From NCBI GenBank assembly GCA_965235115.1, contig OZ249447.1:9114001-9178000 (forward strand): a stretch of DNA of 64,000 nt. The letters are read 5' to 3'. This DNA comes from Laetmonice hystrix. Its lineage: Eukaryota. The position numbers and the translations under genes were made by a program. This document shows, piece by piece, positions 4,863 to 46,400 of this stretch. Under the pieces are notes generated by a model, which had not been told where the DNA came from, searched no databases, and worked only from the letters and a program-made list of their open reading frames with translations. Each line of letters starts with the position of its first letter. Within the stretch, counting starts at the first letter, position 1.

Positions 4863-7800
4863 ATGGCTGCAAATCCATTATTTAATGCTGTCGGTCCCAG
4901 GAAATCGTCCCGTCTCGTAGCCGGAGATGGGCCAGACACCCCCGGTCGCCCGACTCGGGTGTCACCGAGTGGTCCCACTCACAGACACAGTGAGTCTGGT
5001 ACTAGTAGTAGTACAAGTAGGCCTGGTATCGGTCGTGATAGCCTGCTTTGCAAAGCCCCCAAACCGGAGTGTAAACAGTCTCGTCCTCTGTCCCTTCAAA
5101 CCCCTCAAGGCCAAGCCCAAGGTAACATTGTCATGGCAGAACTCGTAGAACGAGAAGGTCCAAACACAAAAGTTAAGAGTAAGACTAAGTTTCAGTATCC
5201 ATCTCCAAGACAAAAGGCAAAAGATGAGGAACCACCAGATAAAAGACGTCGAACTGATAACCAAAAGCCCGTGTCAGCTAATCCAGTAATGCATCAGCCA
5301 AGTGATGATCTCTGGGATGATGATTATTTTGATTTCATGACAGAAGATCAATTTGAGAATATTGATCAAGCCATTGCTCTTTCCCAGCAAGTAAATGTAG
5401 CAAGTAGAGAACCTGCATATAACGTCTGCAGCAGTAGAAAGCAGACATTGGCTTGCCGAGCTGTTGGTCGGGGTATGGGCCGCAGCCATTCAGCAGGTGA
5501 GGTAGTACAGAAGAATCATCAGAAGGTACAGAAGAAAGTCATGCAAACGGAAGGGATAAACTCAGTGGATGAAAACTTGCAGAGGTCCAAACATCCAAGG
5601 GGCTCGGCCTCCTCGTCTGCAATATCAGAAACCACTCGGTCTGTTGCTTACAACAAATTGTCATCCAGTACCGTTCCAAAGTCTTCTACATCCAAACAAA
5701 GTGGCAGTAAAGAATTACAGCCCAAGGTGCCTACCGGTGGTGCAGTTTCAACAAAATCGCAGCTCACACCTACAGCAGGAACAACCTGCAGTGGCCAGTT
5801 CTCACCAGCTTTACCAGGAGGCGGAGGAGGTCATGGTAGAACTGAATTTTCTGACATTCTGCAGAGTAGAATTAAACAATTAACGGAAGAAACCGACAAC
5901 AACAAACAAGAGGTACGGAGAGATTGGTTCCATATATTTAAGAAAGTTGTATGAATGTTAAGTAATATTATTAGGCATAAAAATTAGAGGGATTATACAT
6001 TGATGTAGTGTAACTGGTCCTTGAAAATGATATTTTTATTTGATTTCTTTAATTCTGTGCCAACCACCTCATATATGATTTTTGTTTTTGGAACAGATTA
6101 AAAAACTAACGGCTATTGTGTTGAACAAAGATGGACAAATCAAAAATTTGCGCACTTCACTTCATGAAAAGGATGCTGAAAATTTAGCAAGGAAGCAAGA
6201 GAAAATAGAGTTTCTTGAGAAGCAGGCAATACGTGAATCTGAGCGAGATAAACTTTTTGAAAAGGAAGTTGAGAGATTTAAAACTCAACTACAGTTCAAA
6301 GAACAGGATATAGTGGAGCTACAAGGCCGTTGTAAATGGTTCGAAAAATTGAAGAATGTTGCCAATAGTCAGTCTCCAAGTCGCCCGGGTCAAGGCTGCC
6401 TACAGGCTGGTCAGAGCCCAAGAGCGAGAGTAGATCAGAAGTCACCAAGAACATCGAAGGGCAACTTCCCAAGTGGGGTCACATTCATGGCAGATGAATG
6501 CACTCCCAAAAGCAAGTCTTCCCAAAAAGGCACATCGACACCTCAGCTGGATAAAGGTTAGTGAAATATAGAACTTCACAGGTATTGAACAATCAAAAGT
6601 GTTAATTTTCCATAGATTTTGTAAGTTTTCTTCATTAAGCATCTGCATCAAGTAAGAATGTAATATCAAAATACATGAGGCCTAATATTATCACTTCCAT
6701 TGCTGGCCTAAAGTATTGCAGTCGTGTATCATATTTGAGGAAAAAGGGACGGTATCTTTTAGAGGTTATGTATAACTGACTGCAAATAGGGATTTTTTAT
6801 TGAACCACATTTCTATGTATGAATGATGTTTTTTTTAACTAGCTGAGACCGCACAAAGAACAGAAGGAGAAATCCAGGGCCCCAAAGCCAAGAGTCCTAA
6901 CCCTTGGCCCTGCGTTAAAGTACATATACCAAACTCAAGGGGTCTGTACCAAAATCTGATTCCATTCATTATAGAGCCTCAAAATCAAGAAGAAAGACAT
7001 ATTTTTTTGGATGTAATATTAATCATAATTTGTCAAGAGTAAGAAACATTGAGAAAATCTTGAGCACTTGAATATAATGTTTGATTTTCTTGACCTTTAG
7101 CGAAACTTAACCACTTGCCCATGGATTGAGTATAAAAATGCATGCATTAAAGTTCCATTCCAACAGGTGAGATATGTACAGGATCTGCTTACCTGTGTAA
7201 TATGTAATTAGTAAAAACACATTTTTTACAGAATTATCCCTGCTTGGCTTAACCAAGTAAAAAGTAATCCAACGGGCAAGTGGTTAAGAGTTTGAAAAAT
7301 GTCTGAAAGGACACATTGCAACTTCCTAATGCAACTTCTTGTTTGAAGACATAGAGATATGAAGTCTGTCAACTGTTTACAATATAGGTCACATGCATGG
7401 GCCTCGGATGATGGGCAAGATGTTGGCAGAACACTCAAAAATAGGGACAGCCCATCCTCAGGGCATCATGGGTTTGCTGCAGGTGCCCCCAAAACATCAA
7501 GACCTTCAGGAGCTTGGTCTTCACAGAGACATGGTCACCCACACTTTCTCCCCAGCCAAGACAAAAAGGCATGCATTTTATTTTGATCCTTGAATAAGTA
7601 AATGATTTTGACCAAAAGCATTTTTACAGATTCAAAACTGTTGCAGATTTAGCAGATTAGTTCGATTTTTTAGACCTCTACAAGATGTAGTACTAGCTAG
7701 TTATTACATATTACAACTTATTGCCTTGTTTCAGAGTTTTGTCATAACTCATGAAGACAAATAACATTATTATTAAGAAACCCAAACTGTAGCAATTGAG

Positions 7801-25798: not shown

Positions 25799-25947
25799 NN
25801 NNNNNNNNNNNNNNNNNNNNNNNNNNNNNNNNNNNNNNNNNNNNNNNNNNNNNNNNNNNNNNNNNNNNNNNNNNNNNNNNNNNNNNNNNNNNNNNNNNNN
25901 NNNNNNNNNNNNNNNNNNNNNNNNNNNNNNNNNNNNNNNNNNNNNNN
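25799..25947. other. Assembly gap (149 N)
   Basis: Run of N. Confidence 1.
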
Positions 25948-31290: not shown

Positions 31291-33844
31291 TAGACTCTAG
31301 TACCTAGATCTTAGACTTGCTCTTTCGTTTTTGACATTTGACGACCGTAGGCCTACTAATATTTTGCGATAGAGTCTAGGCTCGCGTAAAAATAATGACA
31401 TCACTTTTAGAGTCTAACCTCTAATTTTAAACAAATAAAAAAATGGCCAACTTCCAGTTCCAGATTTAGGCCTAACACTAGTAACAGTAACATTACTTAC
31501 TGTATTAATATTGCTATAATACTAGAGTACAAAGGGTAATGTTAGTCTTTTCGATGACCCCCCCCCCCTCAGCGAACCGTACATAACAGAAAAACTCGTG
31601 TTTGGTTTTTTTTTTGCTTAGCTGACGAATTACAGATCGACGTTTTTCACAGTTTTTAAAAAGCGTATGCAGGGAGTGCCAAATCGAGTGACCGAGACAA
31701 CCAAAAAATCGGTCTGGGCAACTGGAATAAGCCGATCAGTTGCCCATTGAACAACTACGTACACTACAGCAATGGCTGTATAAATTATAATACAGTGGTC
31801 ACTAAATTTGTAGCCCGGGACTACCAAAAAATAAAAAACAACCATATTGACAAATTGTGGTTGCCCGGGGGCTACCATTAATGGCATTATTTTGGAAGCA
31901 TTATCCTAACCAACCGACATCATCACCAACATGACTCTGTAGCTAGGTCAGGGATATGCCGTATATATAGTCCCTTTAGCCGCGCATGTGCGTGTGCAGA
32001 AAAGCAGTGCGCGGCAATAGGGAGGTTGCGCCAGGAGCTTACAAAATTTTACACTAGGTGGCGCGTCGAATACGGGTTTCCGGCCCAGTTTGTTTGAAAA
32101 AATGCGGGGGTGCGTGGCAAATAGGTAGTGCGCAGCTAAAGGGACATATACGGTATATAGGATTTCAAGAGGGCATGGCACGCATATCCAAAAACGGGCA
32201 CTGTGATGAAGGGGCATTTGAACACACAAAGTCTTCTAAGGCACAGGGCACAGCCTGGAGATCAATTAACTGCATGTATTGACCAGCTCAAGTACCAGGG
32301 CTTGTCCTTTGAAAAAAGCAGGTGCACAAAATTTTGTGCACCTTGAAAGAGGTAGGCGCGCATTTTTTTTTTGTGCACCTAAAATGTGGTAGGCGCACAA
32401 TTTATTTTTGGGTCAGATGAGGTGTAATAGTGTGTATCCTCGCAAACCCTCACACATCCCATCCGTCTCGACTTCTGTTAATGATCAACCATAGGCACAT
32501 GGTTACTGCCAGGGTACAAGCACATACTGGAAAGGGTTAAGATCTTGCTTGAGCTGAAGCTTAACACTTACAATTGGCTGGTCTCAGCAGACAGCCAATC
32601 AAAAGCTTTTAAAAGTAAGATCTTCAGTTTTTATGAATTGAACCCAGGACTCACATTCTTTTAGGTCACACTTGTTCTGAGGCCATCATCATTGTTCCAA
32701 ATGGACTGAATAGGGCGCCTAAGTATGTCACGAGAATTCAAGAGATTTCGCGTTGTCGGGACAAGGAGCAGATAGCCTCGCTGGTTTAACATTGCGATGG
32801 CCATAGGGAACAGTGACAGTCAACTTTAAAATATTTTCATTCTGCAGTGAAGTCGCTGTTAATATTTAAACGTTACAATACATGATGGCTGGCATGTTTA
32901 CTCTGGGATAAAGTTTGTTTTATAGTTTAGAAAGTTAGATTGTGAATATACGGGCTGGTTTTTGTAAGCCTGTCGGCCCTGTCAATGCTAATCCTATGGG
33001 AAATTTTTTGACGTCACAATCGCATGGCGCACGTTTGGTGCTATCGCGAGCTGGTTTGAGGCTATTTAACGTCATTTGCATAACCAGGTCACGAGACTTA
33101 GGCGCCCTATAAATGAAAAAGACTTGACCTGGTCCCGAGGATGGACAGCACTTGCCGACAGGATGCAGAACCTACAATTTATTACACACACACAAACCAT
33201 ACCACACTCCAGTGCATCACACAAAAAAATGGTAGGAGTGCTAACATTCACACTCCTTAAAGTTAAACTAGTGTCCTGAGTGTGAATAGCACTCCTTAAA
33301 ATCGTACAGCTAAAATTGACAATGAGCTCTGTTAATATTTACGACATTAGTAACCTGAACAGCAAAGAATTTACATGTAGTTTGTACCACATAAAATGAC
33401 TGCTTTCATATTAATTTATAATTTATTGCGAGACTAAGGGGTGCAAGCGCGATCGCGCTCCTTAAACATGATGCACTGACACTGCATGTTTGGTCAGTGT
33501 TCTCGTGTCATTCATTTACTAGAAGCTGTTTCATTGCCCTCATAATATTTTTCTGTGTGGAGCTCTGCAACAAGATCTAAGAACTTTGAAACTTGGTAAC
33601 ATTTTGCCATTAAGTTACCTCCAGAGTCTGGAGTGTACATTGTACTACAACTGATTTGGAAAAAATAACACTGCTAATTTTAAACTTGCAAATTGCAAAA
33701 AAAGATCAATTAACAGGGATTTACAGTACCCTAGTAATATCCCTTGCTGTTTTGATTGGCTTGCTTCTAAAACTAGTGTTGGCAACTGTGGCCTGCTTGG
33801 GACCTTCTTGCAGGTTGCTCCACAGACTGCCGGGTTACCTTGCC

Positions 33845-36800
33845 ATGATGGACCACCGAGACCATGTGAATGTCACAGACACAAATCACGTGATGAGCAC
33901 ATCCATGATTATTGACGATGACCTGTCCGACGAGCCCAGTTCACCTGAAAGCACATTTGATGAATCAGTTCTCCTAGACTCCAGTGTAACTGGCGACGTT
34001 GCTGCTCAATTAGCAGCTGCAGGTGGGTAGAGCAACAGATGCTAAATTGTGAGCCTTAATTTATTATAGGTGTTGACATAAAACACACGTATGATGAACA
34101 ACACATCAATGATGAGTGACGGTCTGAGCGACGATGACAGCTCACCGGAGAGTCCCTCATATGATGAGACTGATCTGCTCAACGCCACTGATGAAGTTAT
34201 GGCACAGCTTGCTGCTGCAGGTTCGTCGAAAATGCATGCATATTTCTGCCGATCAAGCTGCAAAACCATGCATGGATGTTGTATTGTTTCAGAAATGTGA
34301 AAGTACCCGTATTCAAGAAGAATTCAGACTCTTTGATTTCCAGGAAAACAGCATCCACATTCCATCTTTTTGTTGTCCAATATGTAATACCTGTTTTAGT
34401 CACTGGATCAATTGTGAATGTGGATATATGTGTTCATTTTTGGCCAAAATGCTTTCATTTGAATATTTTTCCCTTCTGTTCTAGTTCTTTCTAATTTATT
34501 CTTTATTATCTAGACTAATTCCCAATGTTGTGTGAATTGTAATCATTTCATTTCTTTCTGGGTAAGATATTTCTCATATATTGCTTGCCATAGTTAGTTC
34601 AGTGCACCTGTTTAATTCTAGAGACATCATTGTGTGTTCATTTCTTTCAAAATATCTTAAGTAGTCAGCATTTTATGACAGCTTTGCTTCAGACGGTGAA
34701 CATGAAGGTTGAAATTTGTGAATGGAAACCCGAAAATTGCAAACAAAAGAATTCACATGCTTGGTCTCATCTATACAAATGCCAAGACGAAGTTTTATAT
34801 TTTGGTCTCCAATGCTATCAAGCATGGTTTAATAATGTCAATAAATAAATGAATATTGGTTCTACAGACATGAACATTTTCTACAGATTCACAGATATCC
34901 CCTTTTTGGGGATTGAAATGCCACCAAAAATGCACCAAATTTGTGTCTGAATTTTGAAATTTTCCTACCATTGACCACAAAATCATAAGTTTCAACAGTT
35001 TTGATATTTTCTCCTGATCATGTCTGGTTTCATAATAAAGCTAATGTGAGTACATGTAGGAAAGGCATCATAAAACCAGTTACAACCATAGTTCATGTCC
35101 GTATTCTCACATCTCTGGTTCCAGGGCCAATTGGTGTTGCAGCAGCTGCAGCTATAGCCACCGGTAAAAAGAGGAAAAGGCCTCATTCCTTTGAAACGAA
35201 CCCATCCATACGAAAACGACAACAAACACGGTTATTAAGGTAAGGCTCGATTTGATTTTGTAAACTGTTGACTGCTATTTATTGGATTTCAAGCCTTTAA
35301 ATAATGTCTCTAGTGTTCAAATCCATGACAACAGGTACCTAACTAGATTTACAACTGACTGTTCCAGAAAACTGAAGAACACAATTGACGAGTACACAAC
35401 AAGGGTTGGCCAACAAGCAGTTGTTCTGTGTTGTACTCCAGGAAAGCCAAGCCAGTCATCCCAGTCCTTTAAAGTGTTTGGATCACAACCTTTGGAAAAT
35501 GTTGTAAGTGTTTGAGAAGGAAATAGTCTGAGAAACATCATTTGTAATCATCTAGGTTGTAAAACAGTGAACAAAGCCCCCCCCCCCCCGCCCACACACA
35601 CACACACACACACACACTTTCAAAACTCTTTCCAGGTCCCTGTTCAGTATATACAGCAAATACAACACAGTGAATATGTATGGTATCCTTTTTGTTTGCA
35701 CTATTTCAGTTACGGAACTGTCGGCCAGCAGTCATGCAAGACTTGGAAGCATCTCTTGCCCAGCAGGCGCCGCCAGCACAGCCAGAGAACCCAGCCCTCC
35801 ATGAACTTCCCCCACTTGTCATAGATGGCATCCCCACACCTGTAGATAAAATGACACAGGTGCGTCATACCGTTGCTCTGTCCAGATTTTGAAGTTTTTT
35901 TGCAAGGTCTCAGATTTGGACAATGAGTATTTGGTGTTATTGCATTCTCCCAGAGAATATTTATAATTGGATCGGTGCTGGAGTGGCAGTGGTTTAAAAC
36001 ATGGCTTGACAGGAGTTAAATGAACTAGCTACCAGCTAGTCGAAAGTGAAAGCTCTTGTAAGCAGTCCAATGCCTCAACAATTGCAGGCCTATGCATACC
36101 CATGGCAGCATGTATAACATAGAAACTACATCCAGTCTGCCGACTCAATTAAAATGTATCTTTGGACAAAATTGGTAGCCAAGATATACTCGTTTACTCA
36201 TCCAAAGTCCAAGCTTGGGTAAGTGACATTTACAGAATTTGTCTGGCCCTCGCAGACTGTATTGGTCATATTAGCAGTTGGCAGGTCATTATCCTGTGCA
36301 AAGGTTGGATATCTTAGTGGCCTGAACAGTAATTTTATTGGTTATAAAAGTTTCTGGCCCATAAACTGATAAAGACCGTTGGATCATAATGGGACCCAGT
36401 GGGTCATAATTCCGGCTGGAACTGTATTTACACTTTCAGTATTGGAGTTATCATCTCATGTGTCATAATGATTCATATGCATTAATTATTATATATGACT
36501 GGTATATTAATGAAAATTGTATGAAAATATAATTCAGTAAAACCTAAAGGTGGGGCAGGGAGATCATCCGTGTGGGCACTTGGAGATGGATTGTAGGTGG
36601 GTGGGAGCATTCATCCCGAAAAGTTAGTTTCGAGCCATGCAAAGTAGAGCTAGCATTAAAATTTAACACAGATTTAGGTTTTAGGGATAGGAGCCGTGTC
36701 AGCCATATGGCCACCTTGTATTGCAGGCTCAGCTACGTGCCTTCATCCCCCTGATGCTCAAGTATGCCACTGGACGTGGCAAGCCGTGCTGGGGACGTGA

Positions 36801-39800
36801 TGAGCAACGCCCACCCTGGTGGCCAGCTAACGTTCCATGGGCCAACGTCCGCTCCGATGTTCGCAGTGAAGAACAAAAGCAACAGGTACCAGTCTTTGAG
36901 CAAAGCTTTGAGCCTTGTGTTATCTCTCTCTATCTGTAGGCCCAGCTACGTGCTTTCATCCCAGAGATGCTCAAATACTCAACAGGCCGCAGCAAACCTG
37001 GTTGGGGAAAGCCTGAGTGTCGGCCAATCTGGTGGCCCAACGATGTACCTTGGGCAAATGTCCGCAGTGATGTCCGGTCGGAGGATGAGAAAAAGAAGGT
37101 ATTTGGTGGAAAATGTTTGCAGAGGTGGACTCTCTGCACGTCTGATGTGTTTGTTCACCAGTCTTTGTGGAACCCTTCTTGTGTTTGTTGAATCGTCTTC
37201 AGTTTGATGTGCATCCACCATCAGTTCATTGTCTGCATCCACCTGTCTCTGTATACATGTATACTTATGTAGAATAAGTCCAGACACCATCAGTAGCATC
37301 ACATGCTGGTAGTCGAGTTTTGTTTTAACCAGTGTTTCAATTTGTTTTACACCTGTTTTCCTGTTGCTGTGTATATTGTTTATCCTATGTTTTTTGGCAT
37401 AGATGATGACTCTATTGTCTAGAGTAGCAGTCAGTCTCATCTGTACATGATTCCTTTTGCAACTATGAGTTATTGAGTCAATGAGTTATTATTGTGAGTT
37501 GGCTGCAACACAGTGAACAAATCAGAAAGCAGTGTAAGCCGTTATAACTTATAGACCAACTGGTGTCAATTCTTCTGGAATGGTTATTATAAACCTAGTA
37601 CGTACTTAACGGATGTCATCAGTAATATTGACTTTTAAAAAAGCATGTACTATTTAATGTTACTGACCTCATCTAAAAATTACCTTAGCCCAAGCAAACT
37701 CCACCTTGAAGGTGATGCACTGTGTTCTTCCCACTTTTAAGCCTCCAAATAATTCAGTTTGAGACTTTACTTTTCTCACCAAACAAAGATTAAATCTAAC
37801 AGTTTTCCAGTAGATAATCGTACAATATTAGCAGTAATTGAAGGCCCTATTTGTGCCTATTAACTACCCTACCTGGTAATTTCTAGCCGTAGATATATTG
37901 CAATATATATCGCAACCACAGTTTACTCTTTCCTTTCTAGGTATCTTGGACTCACGCACTCCGCTGCATCGTTAAAAATTGTTACAAACACCATGGACGA
38001 GAAGACCTGCTCCCTGATTTTGATGAAGTTACACTTTCGTCACATGTTCCCGGCCCACAGTATGCCCAGCAGACAATGGTCCAAACAATAAACAATCCAG
38101 ATGGTACTGTGTCCATCATTCAGATAGACACTGGAGATGTCCAAAACCCACAGATGGTCACTTTGGCTGATGGCACACAGGCACAGGTCGTCCACACCGT
38201 TGCTCCAGTAAGTACCGTTTGCAACTGTTTCAGGTAAAATTCAATGATCGATGTATTATTGAATCTGACAGCAATTTTGATATTATTACTGAGGGTAGTG
38301 CCATCACATGCATGATCGGTTTTCTACTATCAAATCTGGCACCAAAAGGACATCATGATATTTTCCATACACAGGGTATTTTGGCCCATGTGTGCACCCC
38401 CCCCCCTTTTTATTAGGGGAAGGAACTTTCCTTTAATATAGGAAAGAAATTGAATATTCCAACCTTTTTCTCTAGCCTATGAAACCTACTTTGTGACTTT
38501 GGTAGTTGCCATCATGTGGATTTGTGTTCTTGAAGTTAAAGACGAAACTGTTCATTCCTTGTGCTAGGGGAAGCAGAATACAAACCTTTCAATACAGAGC
38601 CCTGCTATGTACTGGGCAGTGGCAGGAATCTTTCTTATCCTGAAATAGTGGTAAAAGCAACTGTGCCAGCTTTTCATAATGATAATTTTGGGACTTGAGC
38701 ATGTATCTTTATGCATGAACAAGTGATGCAGGCTCAGTGCAGTCTTCAAGCTATTCTAAGTCCATGGGATGAGAAAAGAACTGGACTGACATTAGCACAT
38801 GTGAACGTTATAATGGTAAACGTGTCTGGTTTCTTCTTACAGACACAAGAGTACTACACACGACATGTAAGTTGCATGTTGTTCAGTTTGTAGTATTGTC
38901 AGTGTAGTGTTTTCCTTGTGTACGTTTTTGTATGTGTTTGTTCCGGCTGTCTCAAAGTCATCTCGAGATCTGAATGGTTGAGAGGCAGTGACATAGGCGG
39001 TTTGTTTCCTTAGATTGTGTTTTTACACGAAGGTGTCCCCTAGAATAAATTCCCTCCTATGAAGACAATTCAGCATGAGCAAGCTGATCTTCCATTCACC
39101 CTACCTTTACCTTTGCAAAGGTTACAAAAAGGTAGTTTTATCACAGAAAAAATCAGAATGCCCTTAATTCAAAAATGCAATTTTTTTTTTAATGTTGAGC
39201 CAGTATAGCAGCACAGAACATGTGGAGAAGGCATTGTCATAATAAGCAGGTTGATGTACTGGCCAGTAGACTGTGAAGTTACTGGCCCTGAATGATCCAT
39301 TGGCCTCAGATTTGGGAGCCTCTGCATGCCTGCTGTATGCACTGAGAGTTGTATGCAGAACTAAAAGTTGGGGTCCAAGAGCATGCGGCATGGCCGGGAT
39401 TGGATAAACAACTGGTCTAATTGTGCCAATGTTTGCAAAAGTAAAGTAAGTGGCCTGTACTGGCCCAACGCCTAAACAAAATAGCTAGGGCCATCAGGCC
39501 AGTGCTAATATCAAGGTCTGCAGAGATTAAAATTGTCTGTATTGTCCAATGTCATGAATGGTAGTGGGAGCGGTTTTTGGAGCATGCTTGTACGGTTTGG
39601 TGAACGCTGTGAAAGTCGGTTGTCAACTGGGTGTGGCCTGGTTTAGTTGTCTTGATAATATCCTTCATCAAAAAAGTACATTTTTCTCTCCCACTCGTGA
39701 TAGTCAGGTTCACGAGGAGCCTTGCAACTAGTAATAGTAATTCAGACAGCTCTCAGTCATTCTACAGAATTATAGGCCTCAGTCAAATATAAAGGTCAAA

Positions 39801-43496: not shown

Positions 43497-46400
43497 CTAC
43501 AGTACTTTGAGCATTACAAAATTCTGTATCTTTCGTGGCAGCGATAACATTGCCAATGAAACATAAAGTCTGCTCCCTGCAGTCTTTCGAAATGCAAGTC
43601 TGGCAAGGTGTTGGAGTGACAAGGTACTGTTCTGAACGGCCTTGATCCCACACAGAAGGTCATGTTTGCCGTGCAGTGCCATAGGGACCCCGTGGCTGTA
43701 CTCTGTGAGTAAATCGTGCCTGATTCCTGAGTCGTACGCATCCCCAGCCAGCCATGTCTCCTTGGCCCAGTCTAGGCCTGAGTGCAGTAAGGTTGTAACC
43801 AACTGTCGGTCGCCAAGACGACACGCCTTATGAAGAACCTACAAATAGAACCAAGGGATACAACTGAAAACTTACTGACGATCTGGTTTGCAGTAAAGGT
43901 TACAGTGGGTACTACACCACTGCAAATTGTCCCGATTTGATTAGATTCTTTCCTAATTTCTAATATGCAGCCGAGTATGTAAACATTAACCTTTCAATGT
44001 ACCATGTATGCTTTGCGGTGGATACATTTAAAAATGTGTGGTGAAGGTTCATTGAATACAAGATATTGCTTGGGTGTAGAACTGAGTTGTGGGGGTGGCC
44101 AACCACTGTCTTGTTCGCGCCGCAGGAATCGCTATGTGACCGTTTTTCGGGGGGGGGGGCGGGCAACCCGAAAGACCCCCCCCCCCCGCCTCTTACCCTT
44201 GAAGCAGTATATAAAAAGATATTTCATGTCCTTGACCTTGTAGGCCGTAGAACGTACCGTAATGCCGTGAGGACCTTCAATATTGGGGTCGGCGCCATAC
44301 TGAAGTAGGAGGGCAGCCATGTCTCCCTTGCCGTGCTCGGTCGCCAACCACAGCGGTGTCTTGTCTTGGCTGATGACGTTGAGATTGGCGCCTCTGGACA
44401 CCAAGGTTTCCAGTGTTCGCTCGAAGTCGTTGGCGTCCCAGTGGGTTGTCACGGCGACATGTAGGGGTGTGATGTTCTCCTCAGGATGGCAGAGGTTTAC
44501 GTCACACCCTGCACAGGCCATATACAGGTATACAATATGTATACACACATGTATATAACTTGCAATTACATCTGGGTTAACTTTTTTTTATACACACTGG
44601 GCCTGGCCTTCCTGTAACATGTATACCCCGACCCTTCAGCTTTGAGACTATATTCGCCATGTAAAGTGAACTTTATGAGTTGCAGGTTTATTGAGGTTGG
44701 TGTAACAACTCCAATAGGCTACTTATTCTGGAGTGCGTTTCTCATCTGTCGGTTTCCCTGTCGTGCGTTAAAATCCCCATTGAAAATACACTGGAGTTAA
44801 CGATACGACAAGCTAACGACATGATGAAAAACACACCCCTGTAGCCTATCAGGCATATCAATACCTTACCATAGACACACAGAGATTGGAATTTCAACGA
44901 AATTCTTTGAAATCATCAGTTGTAATCTTACCACTATCCACCAGGATATCGACCGCGTCTGGGTGATTCATTCGGATGGCAAGGTGAAGGGGACTCTCAT
45001 GAAAGTCATCCAGAGCGTCCACTTTACTCCCTACCAAATGGTATCCAATATTGTAGACGTCTAATCAGATTCTACCGTAGAACATGTGATAGTTCGGATT
45101 TAGGGCTCAGGATCAAGCGTGTTGAATCCAGAATTTGAGCGTCTTTTTTTTTGGGGGGGGGGGGCGGGGGGGATACCCGCGTATGCCCAGTGATAAAGTA
45201 AAGGTAGGAGGGCAAGATATTCTAAAATATTTCCTTGAGAAATTTACCGGCAAAATCGGATACGCCTATTTTCCATTGAATCTTTTTGCGCCCACCCGTT
45301 GATAATTATCGTAATCAACGAGGAGCCTGCCATTCATTTCCACACAAGTTAACGGTATCGCTACTAACGAGGCGTTTAGTAGGCCTAAACCAGGAAGGCA
45401 AATATTCCCATGGACATCAGGTGCATTCGTATAGGCTTGATGAGGATTGAAAGTTAGGCCCCTATACCTGTATCTACCAAGATCCGGCAGAGGCTGGCGT
45501 TGCCGTTCCTTGCTGTGTAGTGAATGGGTAGATGACCTTTATTGTTGGGCATGTTAACGCGTGCGCCAGACGACAACAGTATCCGTACCACCTCGTCGTC
45601 ATTTCTCAAACATGATATACATAAAGGTGTAAAACCTGCAAGAAAGAATTGATACTCGAATAAGGTATGTAGAAATACGCCTATACACAAAATTGTGATG
45701 AGATAGGAAAAAGACGCTTACGCTGGAAAACACCAGAAGATGGTAGATCTAAACGTCTAGTCCTTTTATGGCCTACATTTTCCTTAAAGACCAACTTATT
45801 TGGGGCTTATTTAACCAATTCTCTAGTTTCCTTTTAAAACAGTTGGTGTCCGTAACTTACCATACCGATCCTGGACATTGGTCTTGGCGCCATATTTTAA
45901 AAGTAACTGAACCAATCGAAGGTCACCTCCATCGATGGCCAGAAAGAGTGGAGTTCTCTGCGTCTTGATCCCGGCTACATTGACGTTAGCCTTTGCTGCC
46001 AGAAGACATTCAAGGACTTCATAACTGCCGTTTGACACAGCACAGTGTAGAACAGTGACGCCGCAACTGTTAAAGTAGATGTCCACGTCAGATGTAGGCT
46101 ATATATCCTAAAGAGCAGCCTATAGGATTTTTTTTCAGGGGGTAAAGATAATATATTTTTAGTAGTGGATTTGAAGTAGAGATCGACCCATAGAGGTCTC
46201 ATATGCCTAGGCCTACCACACCATCCCAAAACATTCAATGCTATATAGAAATATAAAAATTCATTCAACTACCACAGTTATGTCTGGAGGGAGTTATAGT
46301 TATCTCAACCCCCTGCCTTGGTTTCGCAGTTTACCTATAGGCCCCCTATTGATAGATATCAGGTCTAGATCAACTTACAAGTCCTGTGCATTGACGTTGG

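What the first reader, a model, noticed from the sequence alone, without database searches (positions are those of the whole stretch)
36727..37098. NRF1 DNA-binding domain encoded by two tandem, mutually exclusive-type exons
Seen: two 159-nt, phase 0-0 exons, each with intact AG and GT sites and an open frame. Exon A (36727-36885) reads AQLRAFIPLMLKYATGRGKPCWGRDEQRPPWWPANVPWANVRSDVRSEEQKQQ. Exon B (36940-37098) reads AQLRAFIPEMLKYSTGRSKPGWGKPECRPIWWPNDVPWANVRSDVRSEDEKKK. Conserved residues are often written with different codons, which points to an old duplication under purifying selection rather than an assembly echo. The spacer is only 54 nt, while every other intron I resolved outside the two NRF1 exon pairs is at least about 128 nt, so joining A to B looks sterically disfavoured. 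Known: this segment is the core of the NRF1/EWG DNA-binding and dimerisation domain. From memory, A-type residues (PLMLKY, WGR..RPPWWP) resemble Drosophila EWG and B-type residues (PEMLKYSTGR, WGK..C.PIWWP) resemble vertebrate NRF1. Inference: one gene makes two DNA-binding domains by splicing, possibly an ancestral bilaterian duplication that was lost reciprocally in flies and vertebrates.
Basis: partly seen in the sequence, partly recalled or inferred. Interest (0 to 1): 0.9.

Follow-up and report, generated by a model that had tools for sequence, protein, structure and literature searches.

The report
Alternative DNA-reading exons in NRF1
This worm-like invertebrate's NRF1 gene carries two neighbouring, interchangeable exons for the part of the protein that reads DNA; the same pair is kept in annelids, a ribbon worm and a brachiopod, so one old gene very probably makes two versions of this transcription factor.

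Summary
Exon A (36727-36885) and exon B (36940-37098) are both 159 nt and phase 0-0, have AG/GT sites, and lie 54 nt apart. Both match Pfam PF10491 positions 133-185, which is human NRF1 residues 203-255: helix alpha5 plus the DNA-inserting loop.

- **Not an assembly echo.** DNA contigs of the source sample span the pair, and synonymous sites between A and B are saturated while dN is only 0.24.
- **Conserved elsewhere.** Two siboglinid-type annelid assemblies and one metagenome contig have the same A-then-B pair with a 53-nt spacer.
- **Annotated as alternatives.** RefSeq lists equal-length isoforms that differ only in this segment for the nemertean Lineus longissimus and the brachiopod Lingula anatina.
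- **Consistent difference.** A exons keep G220 and usually L211. B exons have S220 and E211.

The best reading is an old lophotrochozoan pair of mutually exclusive exons, probably kept apart by the very short spacer. No RNA data exist for this species, so usage here is inferred.

I found no paper describing this pair. The scan also noted this stretch under s1-327597.

The parts
35710..35859 (+). NRF1 exon 4, the constitutive exon upstream of the pair. It ends ...DKMTQ in phase 0, with donor GTGCGT.
   Evidence: Splice sites and translation. Pfam PF10491 positions 82-132.
36727..36885 (+). Exon A: alternative exon for the DNA-reading head (human NRF1 203-255). It is the A type with L211 and G220, has an unusual C at the near-invariant G223, and has the weak donor GTACCA.
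   Evidence: Orthologous A exons occur in L004, L011/L021 and Lineus isoform X1.
36886..36939 (+). 54-nt spacer between A and B. It carries exon B's polypyrimidine tract and a branch-point-like UUGAG about 26 nt from A's donor and 28 nt from B's acceptor.
   Evidence: Sequence. The spacer is 53 nt in L004 and L011/L021 although their flanking introns vary several-fold. The RNA has no stable fold. Any branch point inside it lies under 50 nt from A's donor.
36909..36916 (+). TGAGCCTT, a candidate branch-site or regulatory motif. Its only other copy in the 64-kb window is in the 47-nt spacer of the exon 1A/1B pair (34050-34057).
   Evidence: TGAGCC also occurs in the L011 spacer. Its function is inferred only.
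36940..37098 (+). Exon B: the canonical lophotrochozoan version of the same segment (E211, S220), with donor GTATTT.
   Evidence: It falls in the 34-row S220 clade with annelid, nemertean, brachiopod and mollusc sequences.
37941..38207 (+). NRF1 exon 6, the constitutive exon downstream of the pair. It starts VSWTHALR in phase 0.
   Evidence: Pfam PF10491 positions 186-212.
33814..34220 (+). A second duplicated pair in the same gene: exon 1A (33814-34022) and exon 1B (34070-34220). Each has its own ATG, and they are separated by 47 nt. Joining both gives a premature stop.
   Evidence: Not found in L004, L006, L021 or L022.

Best explanation
Exons A and B are an old tandem-duplicated pair of alternative exons. 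Each supplies the same 53-residue module of the NRF1 DNA-binding domain: helix alpha5 with R206, and the major-groove loop with N242 and R244.

A transcript takes exon 4, then A or B, then exon 6. This gives two NRF1 isoforms that share the dimerisation domain but carry different DNA-reading heads. The A type has L211 and G220. The B type has E211 and S220.

Shown:
- Both exons are intact and homologous.
- Both map to the same domain positions.
- Both have been kept under purifying selection.
- Related phyla keep the same pair.
- Annotated isoforms in a nemertean and a brachiopod use one exon or the other.

Inferred:
- The same either/or choice happens in this species.
- Joining A to B is hindered because the 54-nt spacer forces B's branch point to within about 40 nt of A's donor (steric exclusion, as in alpha-tropomyosin exons 2/3).
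- The two heads keep the TGCGC half-site but differ in backbone contacts, affinity or partner use. A/A, A/B and B/B dimers would all be possible.
For: Anatomy:
- Both exons are 159 nt, phase 0-0, with AG/GT sites and a 54-nt spacer.
- A and B both equal PF10491 positions 133-185, flanked by 82-132 and 186-212.
- The base-contact residues R206, N242 and R244 are kept in both. The differences include the backbone-contact positions G220 and G223.

Selection:
- A versus B in the window has pS 0.81 (saturated) and dN 0.24.
- A in L004 versus A in L011 has dS 0.56, dN 0.063 and ratio 0.11. The B exons of the same loci give 0.08.

Conservation:
- The same A-then-B order with a 53-nt spacer occurs in L004, L011 and L021.
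- Their flanking introns range from about 740 to 2850 nt.

Either/or use:
- Lineus longissimus X1 and X2 are both 475 aa, with 10 differences, all in this segment.
- Lingula anatina X1 and X2 are both 464 aa, with 14 differences, all in this segment.
- A spliced Logan contig of a siboglinid relative joins exon 4 to B to exon 6 and skips A.

Orthology:
- The A exons of L004, L011 and Lineus form a clade (94/90), separate from a 34-row B clade (97/73).
- The tree that also holds the window's A with them is 0.76 lnL better than the free tree.
- A Lineus-only duplication has AU p = 0.037.

Steric criterion: donor to branch point under 50 nt (PMC5740500).
Against: - No RNA run exists for this organism, so neither inclusion of A nor exclusivity is shown here.
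- The GenBank model of Ridgeia piscesae (KAK2186184.1) joins A and B in tandem.
- Double inclusion stays in frame, so nonsense-mediated decay cannot remove it.
- The window's exon A is the most diverged A exon (end branch 0.69). It has C at the near-invariant G223, so it could be under relaxed constraint.
- Several relatives lack A altogether: L005, L006/L007, L008 and L022.
- The 50-nt steric limit comes from human data. The shortest spliceable intron in this taxon was not measured.
- The RNA support behind the RefSeq isoforms could not be inspected.
Confidence: 0.75

Rival explanations
1. Exon A is a relic in this species. Only B is spliced into mRNA, and A is drifting towards loss, as has already happened in several relatives.
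For: The window's A has the longest branch of all A exons and replaces the near-invariant G223 with C. Its donor GTACCA and its polypyrimidine tract are weak. A is absent from L005, L006/L007, L008 and L022. No A-type transcript fragment close to this exon was found in the protein collection.
Against: The frame is open, and both splice sites and the exact 159-nt length are intact. Differences from B are biased towards third positions (15/8/31) with synonymous sites saturated. dN to the orthologous A exons is about 0.19-0.20 with dS above 1.7. My rough estimate is that the extra roughly 0.1 dN on this branch, if neutral, would leave about a 1-in-20 chance of no stop, indel or splice-site hit. 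The absence of transcripts means little, because no RNA data exist for the species.
Confidence: 0.12
2. A and B are spliced together at least part of the time. This would give an NRF1 protein with a tandem-duplicated DNA-reading segment, as in the deposited Ridgeia piscesae gene model.
For: The Ridgeia model KAK2186184.1 has both segments back to back. Double inclusion keeps the reading frame. Introns of about 50 nt are spliced in some invertebrates (my own knowledge).
Against: Both exons fill the same Pfam positions, so co-inclusion duplicates half of a three-helix domain. The RefSeq isoforms of Lineus and Lingula, and the siboglinid transcript L026, contain exactly one copy. The spacer stays at 53-54 nt while neighbouring introns vary several-fold. 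All other introns of this gene are 128 nt or more, except the other duplicated pair. An ab initio gene caller would join two in-frame exons by default.
Confidence: 0.08
3. The pairs in this genome, in siboglinid-type annelids, in Lineus and in Lingula arose by separate tandem duplications. They converged on a short spacer and on the G220/S220 split, so the pair is not ancient.
For: AU tests on 53 columns cannot reject window A with window B (p 0.19) or siboglinid A with B (p 0.097). Tandem duplication of this region recurs: an arthropod-type contig has two partial copies (P0001). This same gene made a second pair with a 47-nt spacer. The two Lingula versions both have E211.
Against: The best tree unites all four tested A exons. 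A Lineus-only origin has p 0.037 and a drop of 17 lnL. All A exons have G220 (GGC codon where DNA was available) and all B exons have S220. A exons apart from Lingula X1 have L211, as CTG against GAG in B, which is a two-base change. The order and the spacer length are the same in the genomic loci.
Confidence: 0.15
4. One reading: the duplication dates to the bilaterian ancestor. Flies kept the A type and vertebrates kept the B type.
For: The window's A shares L211, R226, D227 and P232 with insect EWG. B shares E211, C229 and I232 with vertebrate NRF1. An AU test cannot reject placing the A exons outside the E/C-type group (p 0.38).
Against: R226, D227 and P232 are absent from the A exons of L004, L011 and Lineus, so they are changes private to this lineage. 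L211 and G220 are common among non-lophotrochozoan sequences, including arthropods and echinoderms. The echinoderms have L211 and Ptychodera has M211, both with C229, so E211 in vertebrates looks like a separate change. S220, the mark of the B clade, was seen only in lophotrochozoans in the named-species set. No A/B pair was seen in any arthropod, deuterostome or cnidarian sequence examined.
Confidence: 0.05

Closest known systems
TCF3 (E2A) exons 18a/18b, which give E12 and E47
   Same: Two adjacent homologous exons are used one at a time. Each encodes the DNA-binding part of a dimeric transcription factor, so one gene makes isoforms with different DNA-binding heads (PMC6120717).
   Different: It belongs to a different protein family (bHLH) and is a vertebrate case. 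The choice is controlled by hnRNP H/F. No very short spacer is known to me there.
FOXP1 exon 18/18b and Drosophila srp mutually exclusive exons
   Same: Both are transcription factors in which tandem-duplicated mutually exclusive exons change the DNA-binding domain (listed in PMC9013439).
   Different: They involve other folds (forkhead, GATA zinc finger). FOXP1 18b changes the preferred DNA motif (my own knowledge). Here all three base-contact residues are kept, so a change of core motif is not expected.
Alpha-tropomyosin exons 2/3: steric exclusion by branch-point proximity
   Same: The branch point of the downstream exon lies too close to the donor of the upstream exon for the two to be joined. 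This is the criterion used in PMC5740500 (under 50 nt). With a 54-nt spacer this geometry is unavoidable here.
   Different: The mechanism is shown by experiment for tropomyosin (my own knowledge). Here it is inferred from length alone, and the threshold for this taxon is unknown.
NRF1 / EWG / P3A2 family as described so far
   Same: The gene is a clear member: PF10491, conserved R206/N242/R244, and the same exon order as its relatives.
   Different: My searches of the paper library found no description of alternative DNA-binding exons for NRF1, EWG or P3A2. Only unremarked RefSeq isoforms in Lineus and Lingula show it.

Membership tests
NRF1/EWG/P3A2 (Pfam PF10491 Nrf1_DNA-bind) | Match to the family profile above the curated cut-off | tested here: met
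   A scores 80.8 bits and B 92.1 bits against a cut-off of 23.5. Exons 4 and 6 also match. Both hit human NRF1 in the PDB.
NRF1/EWG/P3A2 (Pfam PF10491 Nrf1_DNA-bind) | Base-contacting residues R206, N242 and R244 of the human structure | tested here: met
   They are present in both A and B in the alignments to 8K3D. Their roles are taken from PMC10810270.
NRF1/EWG/P3A2 (Pfam PF10491 Nrf1_DNA-bind) | Binding of the GCGCATGCGC palindrome as a dimer | not testable with these tools
   This needs EMSA, ITC or SELEX with A-type and B-type proteins.
Mutually exclusive exons from tandem exon duplication | Adjacent exons that are homologous and have the same length and phase | tested here: met
   Both are 159 nt and phase 0-0, with 74% amino-acid identity.
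Mutually exclusive exons from tandem exon duplication | Both copies encode the same part of the protein fold | tested here: met
   Both map to PF10491 positions 133-185.
Mutually exclusive exons from tandem exon duplication | Mature transcripts contain exactly one of the two | tested here: inconclusive
   There is no RNA run for this species. In orthologues, the Lineus and Lingula RefSeq isoform pairs and the siboglinid transcript L026 carry one copy. The Ridgeia gene model carries both.
Steric-hindrance class of mutually exclusive exons | Donor of the upstream exon lies less than about 50 nt from the branch point of the downstream exon | tested here: met
   The spacer is 54 nt, so any branch point at least 15 nt from the acceptor is at most 39 nt from the donor. 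The criterion is from PMC5740500. Its validity in this taxon was not tested.
Frame-shift/NMD class of mutually exclusive exons | Exon length not divisible by three, so that double inclusion is destroyed | tested here: not met
   159 = 3 x 53, and double inclusion and double skipping both stay in frame. The exon 1A/1B pair does meet this feature.
U2/U12 incompatibility class of mutually exclusive exons | One intron of the cluster has a U12-type donor (consensus RTATCCTT, from memory) | tested here: not met
   By eye, the donors GTGCGT, GTACCA and GTATTT do not fit that consensus.
Docking/selector RNA-structure class of mutually exclusive exons | Conserved competing base-pairings in the flanking introns | tested here: inconclusive
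   Only the spacer region was folded. It is less stable than shuffled sequence (z +2.1). The long introns were not searched.

The most novel reading that the evidence does not exclude
A splice switch in the DNA-reading head of NRF1 arose once near the base of Lophotrochozoa. It has been kept for hundreds of millions of years in annelids, nemerteans and brachiopods, and lost repeatedly, perhaps in most molluscs. The A (L211/G220) and B (E211/S220) heads would differ in DNA affinity, flank preference or methylation sensitivity. Because they share one dimerisation domain, they would form three kinds of dimer with distinct target sets.
Probability: 0.35. Interest if true: 0.7.

Novelty: new member of a known kind. 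Interest (0 to 1): 0.6.

Why it matters
NRF1 is usually treated as a factor with one fixed DNA-binding head. It is a regulator of mitochondrial and growth genes.

An old, selectively kept either/or exon pair inside that head would mean that a whole animal super-phylum tunes NRF1's DNA contacts by splicing. Three dimer combinations would be possible from one gene.

It would also add a transcription-factor case in non-model phyla to the small set of deeply conserved tandem-exon substitutions. The A versus B differences (positions 211, 220 and 223) are natural variants for testing how the NRF1 loop reads DNA.

For annotation, it warns that gene callers may join both exons, as in the Ridgeia model, or drop one.

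Tried and rejected
- **RNA evidence.** The look-up of sequencing runs found only three DNA runs of one sample and no RNA run. Read laying therefore confirmed only the genomic structure.
- **A-type spliced transcripts in the protein collection.**
  - A query with the window's exon A gave no close A-type fragment of this species.
  - A query with the L004 A exon gave none either. It did lead to P0276 and, indirectly, to the named relatives.
- **Representative search with exon A**. Nothing was more than 79% identical to A. It did yield P0036, which revealed the L004 pair.
- **Tandem-motif scan of JGI metagenomes**. Of 12 hits, only L011 is NRF1.
- **Loci that could not be fetched.**
  - Mya arenaria is not on record.
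  - P0042 has no DNA.
- **Phylogeny.**
  - The first two 53-column trees placed the window's A differently.
  - Most AU tests were non-significant.
  - A tree of the flanking exons did not resolve the species relationships.
- **Taxon.** My early guess that the organism is a mollusc was dropped. The nearest named flanking exons are from Lineus, Ridgeia and Owenia, and other agents' notes call the genome annelid.
- **Cuttlefish and octopus.** I considered them as evidence of A/B isoforms. They differ along the whole protein, so they are not isoforms of one gene.
- **Spacer structure.** The spacer has no stable RNA fold.


Full report
**1. The observation**

The window holds a complete NRF1/P3A2/EWG-type gene on the + strand. 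I rebuilt the 5' two thirds.

- Exon 1A is at 33814-34022, or exon 1B at 34070-34220.
- Exon 2 is at 35125-35239, exon 3 at 35368-35503 and exon 4 at 35710-35859.
- Exon A is at 36727-36885 and exon B at 36940-37098.
- Exon 6 is at 37941-38207.
- All of these have AG/GT borders and a continuous reading frame.

They are 159 nt each, phase 0-0, and 54 nt apart. They share 39/53 residues and 105/159 bases. Differences by codon position are 15/8/31.

Both match human NRF1 chains 8K3D/8K4L. Both occupy the same Pfam PF10491 positions 133-185. Exon 4 ends at position 132 and exon 6 starts at 186. So either exon completes the domain, and taking both would duplicate part of it.

DNA contigs from three runs of one sample cross A, spacer and B without any difference. 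This is a real genomic structure.

**2. What the segment encodes**

In the crystal structure of human NRF1 on ATGCGCATGCGCAT (PMC10810270), the dimerisation domain is residues 54-172 and the DNA-binding domain is 201-284. The exon corresponds to residues 203-255. That is helix alpha5 with R206, the long loop 218-249 that enters the major groove with N242 and R244, and the start of alpha6.

All three base-contacting residues are kept in A and B. The 14 differences include two phosphate-contact positions. At G220, B has S. At G223, A has C. Eight of the 14 differences lie in the groove loop.

The choice therefore swaps the DNA-reading head and leaves the dimerisation domain untouched.

**3. Is exon A a living exon?**

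Synonymous sites between A and B are saturated (pS 0.81) while dN is 0.24. A silent copy would be unrecognisable after that much time.

The same arrangement turned up in other species.

- L004 is a 649-kb ENA contig with an A exon at 6049-6207, a 53-nt spacer, and a B exon at 6261-6419.
- L011 is a JGI metagenome contig found with a tandem PWANVR pattern. L021 is a 1.1-Mb ENA contig. They are near-identical in both exons, again with a 53-nt spacer.

The A segment of L011/L021 is identical to the first of two tandem segments in a Ridgeia piscesae protein, so these loci are siboglinid-type annelids.

Between L004 and L011, the A exons have dS 0.56, dN 0.063 and ratio 0.11. The B exons give 0.08. 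A is thus constrained about as strongly as B in that lineage.

The introns on either side of the pair vary: 867, about 740 and about 2850 nt upstream, and 842, about 2640 and about 790 nt downstream. The spacer stays at 53-54 nt.

**4. Either/or use**

No RNA run exists for this organism, so I looked at relatives.

- RefSeq lists two isoforms of 475 aa for the nemertean Lineus longissimus. All 10 differences lie in this segment. X1 has L211 and G220. X2 has E211 and S220.
- RefSeq lists two isoforms of 464 aa for the brachiopod Lingula anatina. All 14 differences lie in the same segment. X1 has G220 and X2 has S220.
- A spliced Logan contig of a close siboglinid relative of L021 joins exon 4 to B to exon 6 and skips A.

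Against this, the deposited Ridgeia model joins both exons. An automatic gene caller would do that with any two in-frame exons, so I give it little weight, but it is the main piece of contrary evidence.

**5. How the exclusion probably works**

Three of the four known mechanisms do not fit or were not found.

- Double inclusion stays in frame, so decay of a frame-shifted message cannot enforce the choice.
- The donors are not U12-type by eye.
- The spacer RNA is unstructured.

What remains is geometry. With 54 nt between A's donor and B's acceptor, any branch point for B inside the spacer lies within about 40 nt of A's donor. The human survey uses 50 nt as its limit for steric interference (PMC5740500).

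Branch-point-like YUNAG elements sit 26-30 nt from the donor in all three spacers. All other introns of this gene are 128 nt or more. The one exception is the 47-nt spacer of a second duplicated pair, exons 1A/1B, whose joint inclusion gives a stop.

This part is inference. The shortest spliceable intron in this taxon was not measured.

**6. Age and origin**

On 53 columns the trees are weak, but they point one way.

- With named species, the S220 type forms a 34-row clade (97/73). It holds the window's B, Lineus X2, Lingula X2, and annelid, nemertean and mollusc sequences.
- The A exons of L004, L011 and Lineus form their own clade (94/90).
- Holding the window's A with them gives a slightly better likelihood than the free tree.
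- A Lineus-only duplication has AU p 0.037. A siboglinid-only one has p 0.097, and a window-only one has p 0.19.
- All A exons have G220 and all B exons have S220. A has L211 (CTG) against E211 (GAG) everywhere except Lingula.

I read this as one duplication before annelids and nemerteans split, probably before brachiopods too. Later losses followed. Five related genomic loci lack A: L005, L006/L007, L008 and L022. The read-through open reading frame P0103 also shows no A. Only B-type proteins were seen in molluscs.

The fly-like residues of this A exon (R226, D227, P232) are missing from the other A exons. L211 and G220 are common among non-lophotrochozoan sequences. The vertebrate-like E211 of B is matched by L in the echinoderms and M in Ptychodera.

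**7. Identity of the organism**

The flanking exons are closest to Lineus, Ridgeia and Owenia. Earlier notes of this scan call the genome annelid. I treat it as a lophotrochozoan, probably an annelid.

**8. Novelty**

Mutually exclusive tandem exons that swap a transcription factor's DNA-binding part are known: TCF3 E12/E47, FOXP1 and srp. Steric exclusion is also known.

For NRF1/EWG/P3A2 I found no description in the paper library. Only unremarked RefSeq isoforms in two species show it. This is a new member of a known kind. Its interest lies in its depth of conservation and in the protein it affects.

Noticed in passing
window 33814-34220: There is a second tandem pair in the same gene. Exons 1A and 1B each have their own ATG and a similar acidic N-terminus ending ...QLAAAG, and they are 47 nt apart. 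Splicing both gives a stop 16 codons into 1B. The siboglinid-type loci and L006/L022 have a single first coding exon.
   Followed up: partly
window 34050-34057 and 36909-36916: TGAGCCTT occurs only twice in the 64-kb window on both strands. Each copy sits in one of the two tiny NRF1 spacers, preceded by GAGCAA in both. The whole-window count matches chance (2 against 2.2 expected), so only the placement is unusual. It may be a shared branch site or regulator site.
   Followed up: partly
G000:C13:23222674-23222820 (L003), minus strand: A distant NRF1-like exon (45-48% identical to A/B, keeping the WWP...PW.N.R motif) lies 14 Mb away on the same chromosome. It is probably a diverged paralogue.
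   Followed up: no
window 36400-36599: In intron 4, contig depth rises about three-fold and many contigs break with loose ends at 36548-36584. This looks like the edge of a dispersed repeat, about 150 nt upstream of exon A.
   Followed up: no
window 35573-35626: A poly-C run followed by a (CA)n microsatellite lies in intron 3. Read-laying skips it as a repeat.
   Followed up: no
window 25799-25947: A run of 149 N, which is an assembly gap or masked stretch. I left it as it is.
   Followed up: no
P0001 / P0184 (ENA contigs of about 2.2 kb): A GC-rich, arthropod-type (RMDAR) contig carries two tandem partial copies of the same NRF1 region, starting at G(R/K)GKPGWG. This is an independent duplication of this part of the gene in another lineage.
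   Followed up: no
P0346 (Acanthosepion) versus P0342 (Octopus): The cuttlefish NRF1 has an L211/G220-type segment and the octopus protein has an E211/S220-type segment. The two proteins are only 60-65% identical throughout. They may be two paralogous genes in cephalopods rather than isoforms.
   Followed up: partly
P0363/P0382, P0366/P0427, P0375/P0403, P0345/P0356: Several bivalves (Solemya, Mercenaria, Pinctada, Crassostrea virginica) have two distinct B-type NRF1 proteins encoded on the same large contig. This suggests a whole-gene duplication in bivalves.
   Followed up: no
L021 and L004, first coding exon: In the siboglinid-type loci, exons 1 and 2 of the window's gene are fused into one exon. 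The intron after ...AAAG is absent.
   Followed up: no
window 44132-45037, minus strand: Ankyrin-repeat-like open frames (...LHLAIRMNHPDAVDILV..., ...TPLHVAVTTHWD...) indicate a neighbouring gene on the opposite strand.
   Followed up: no
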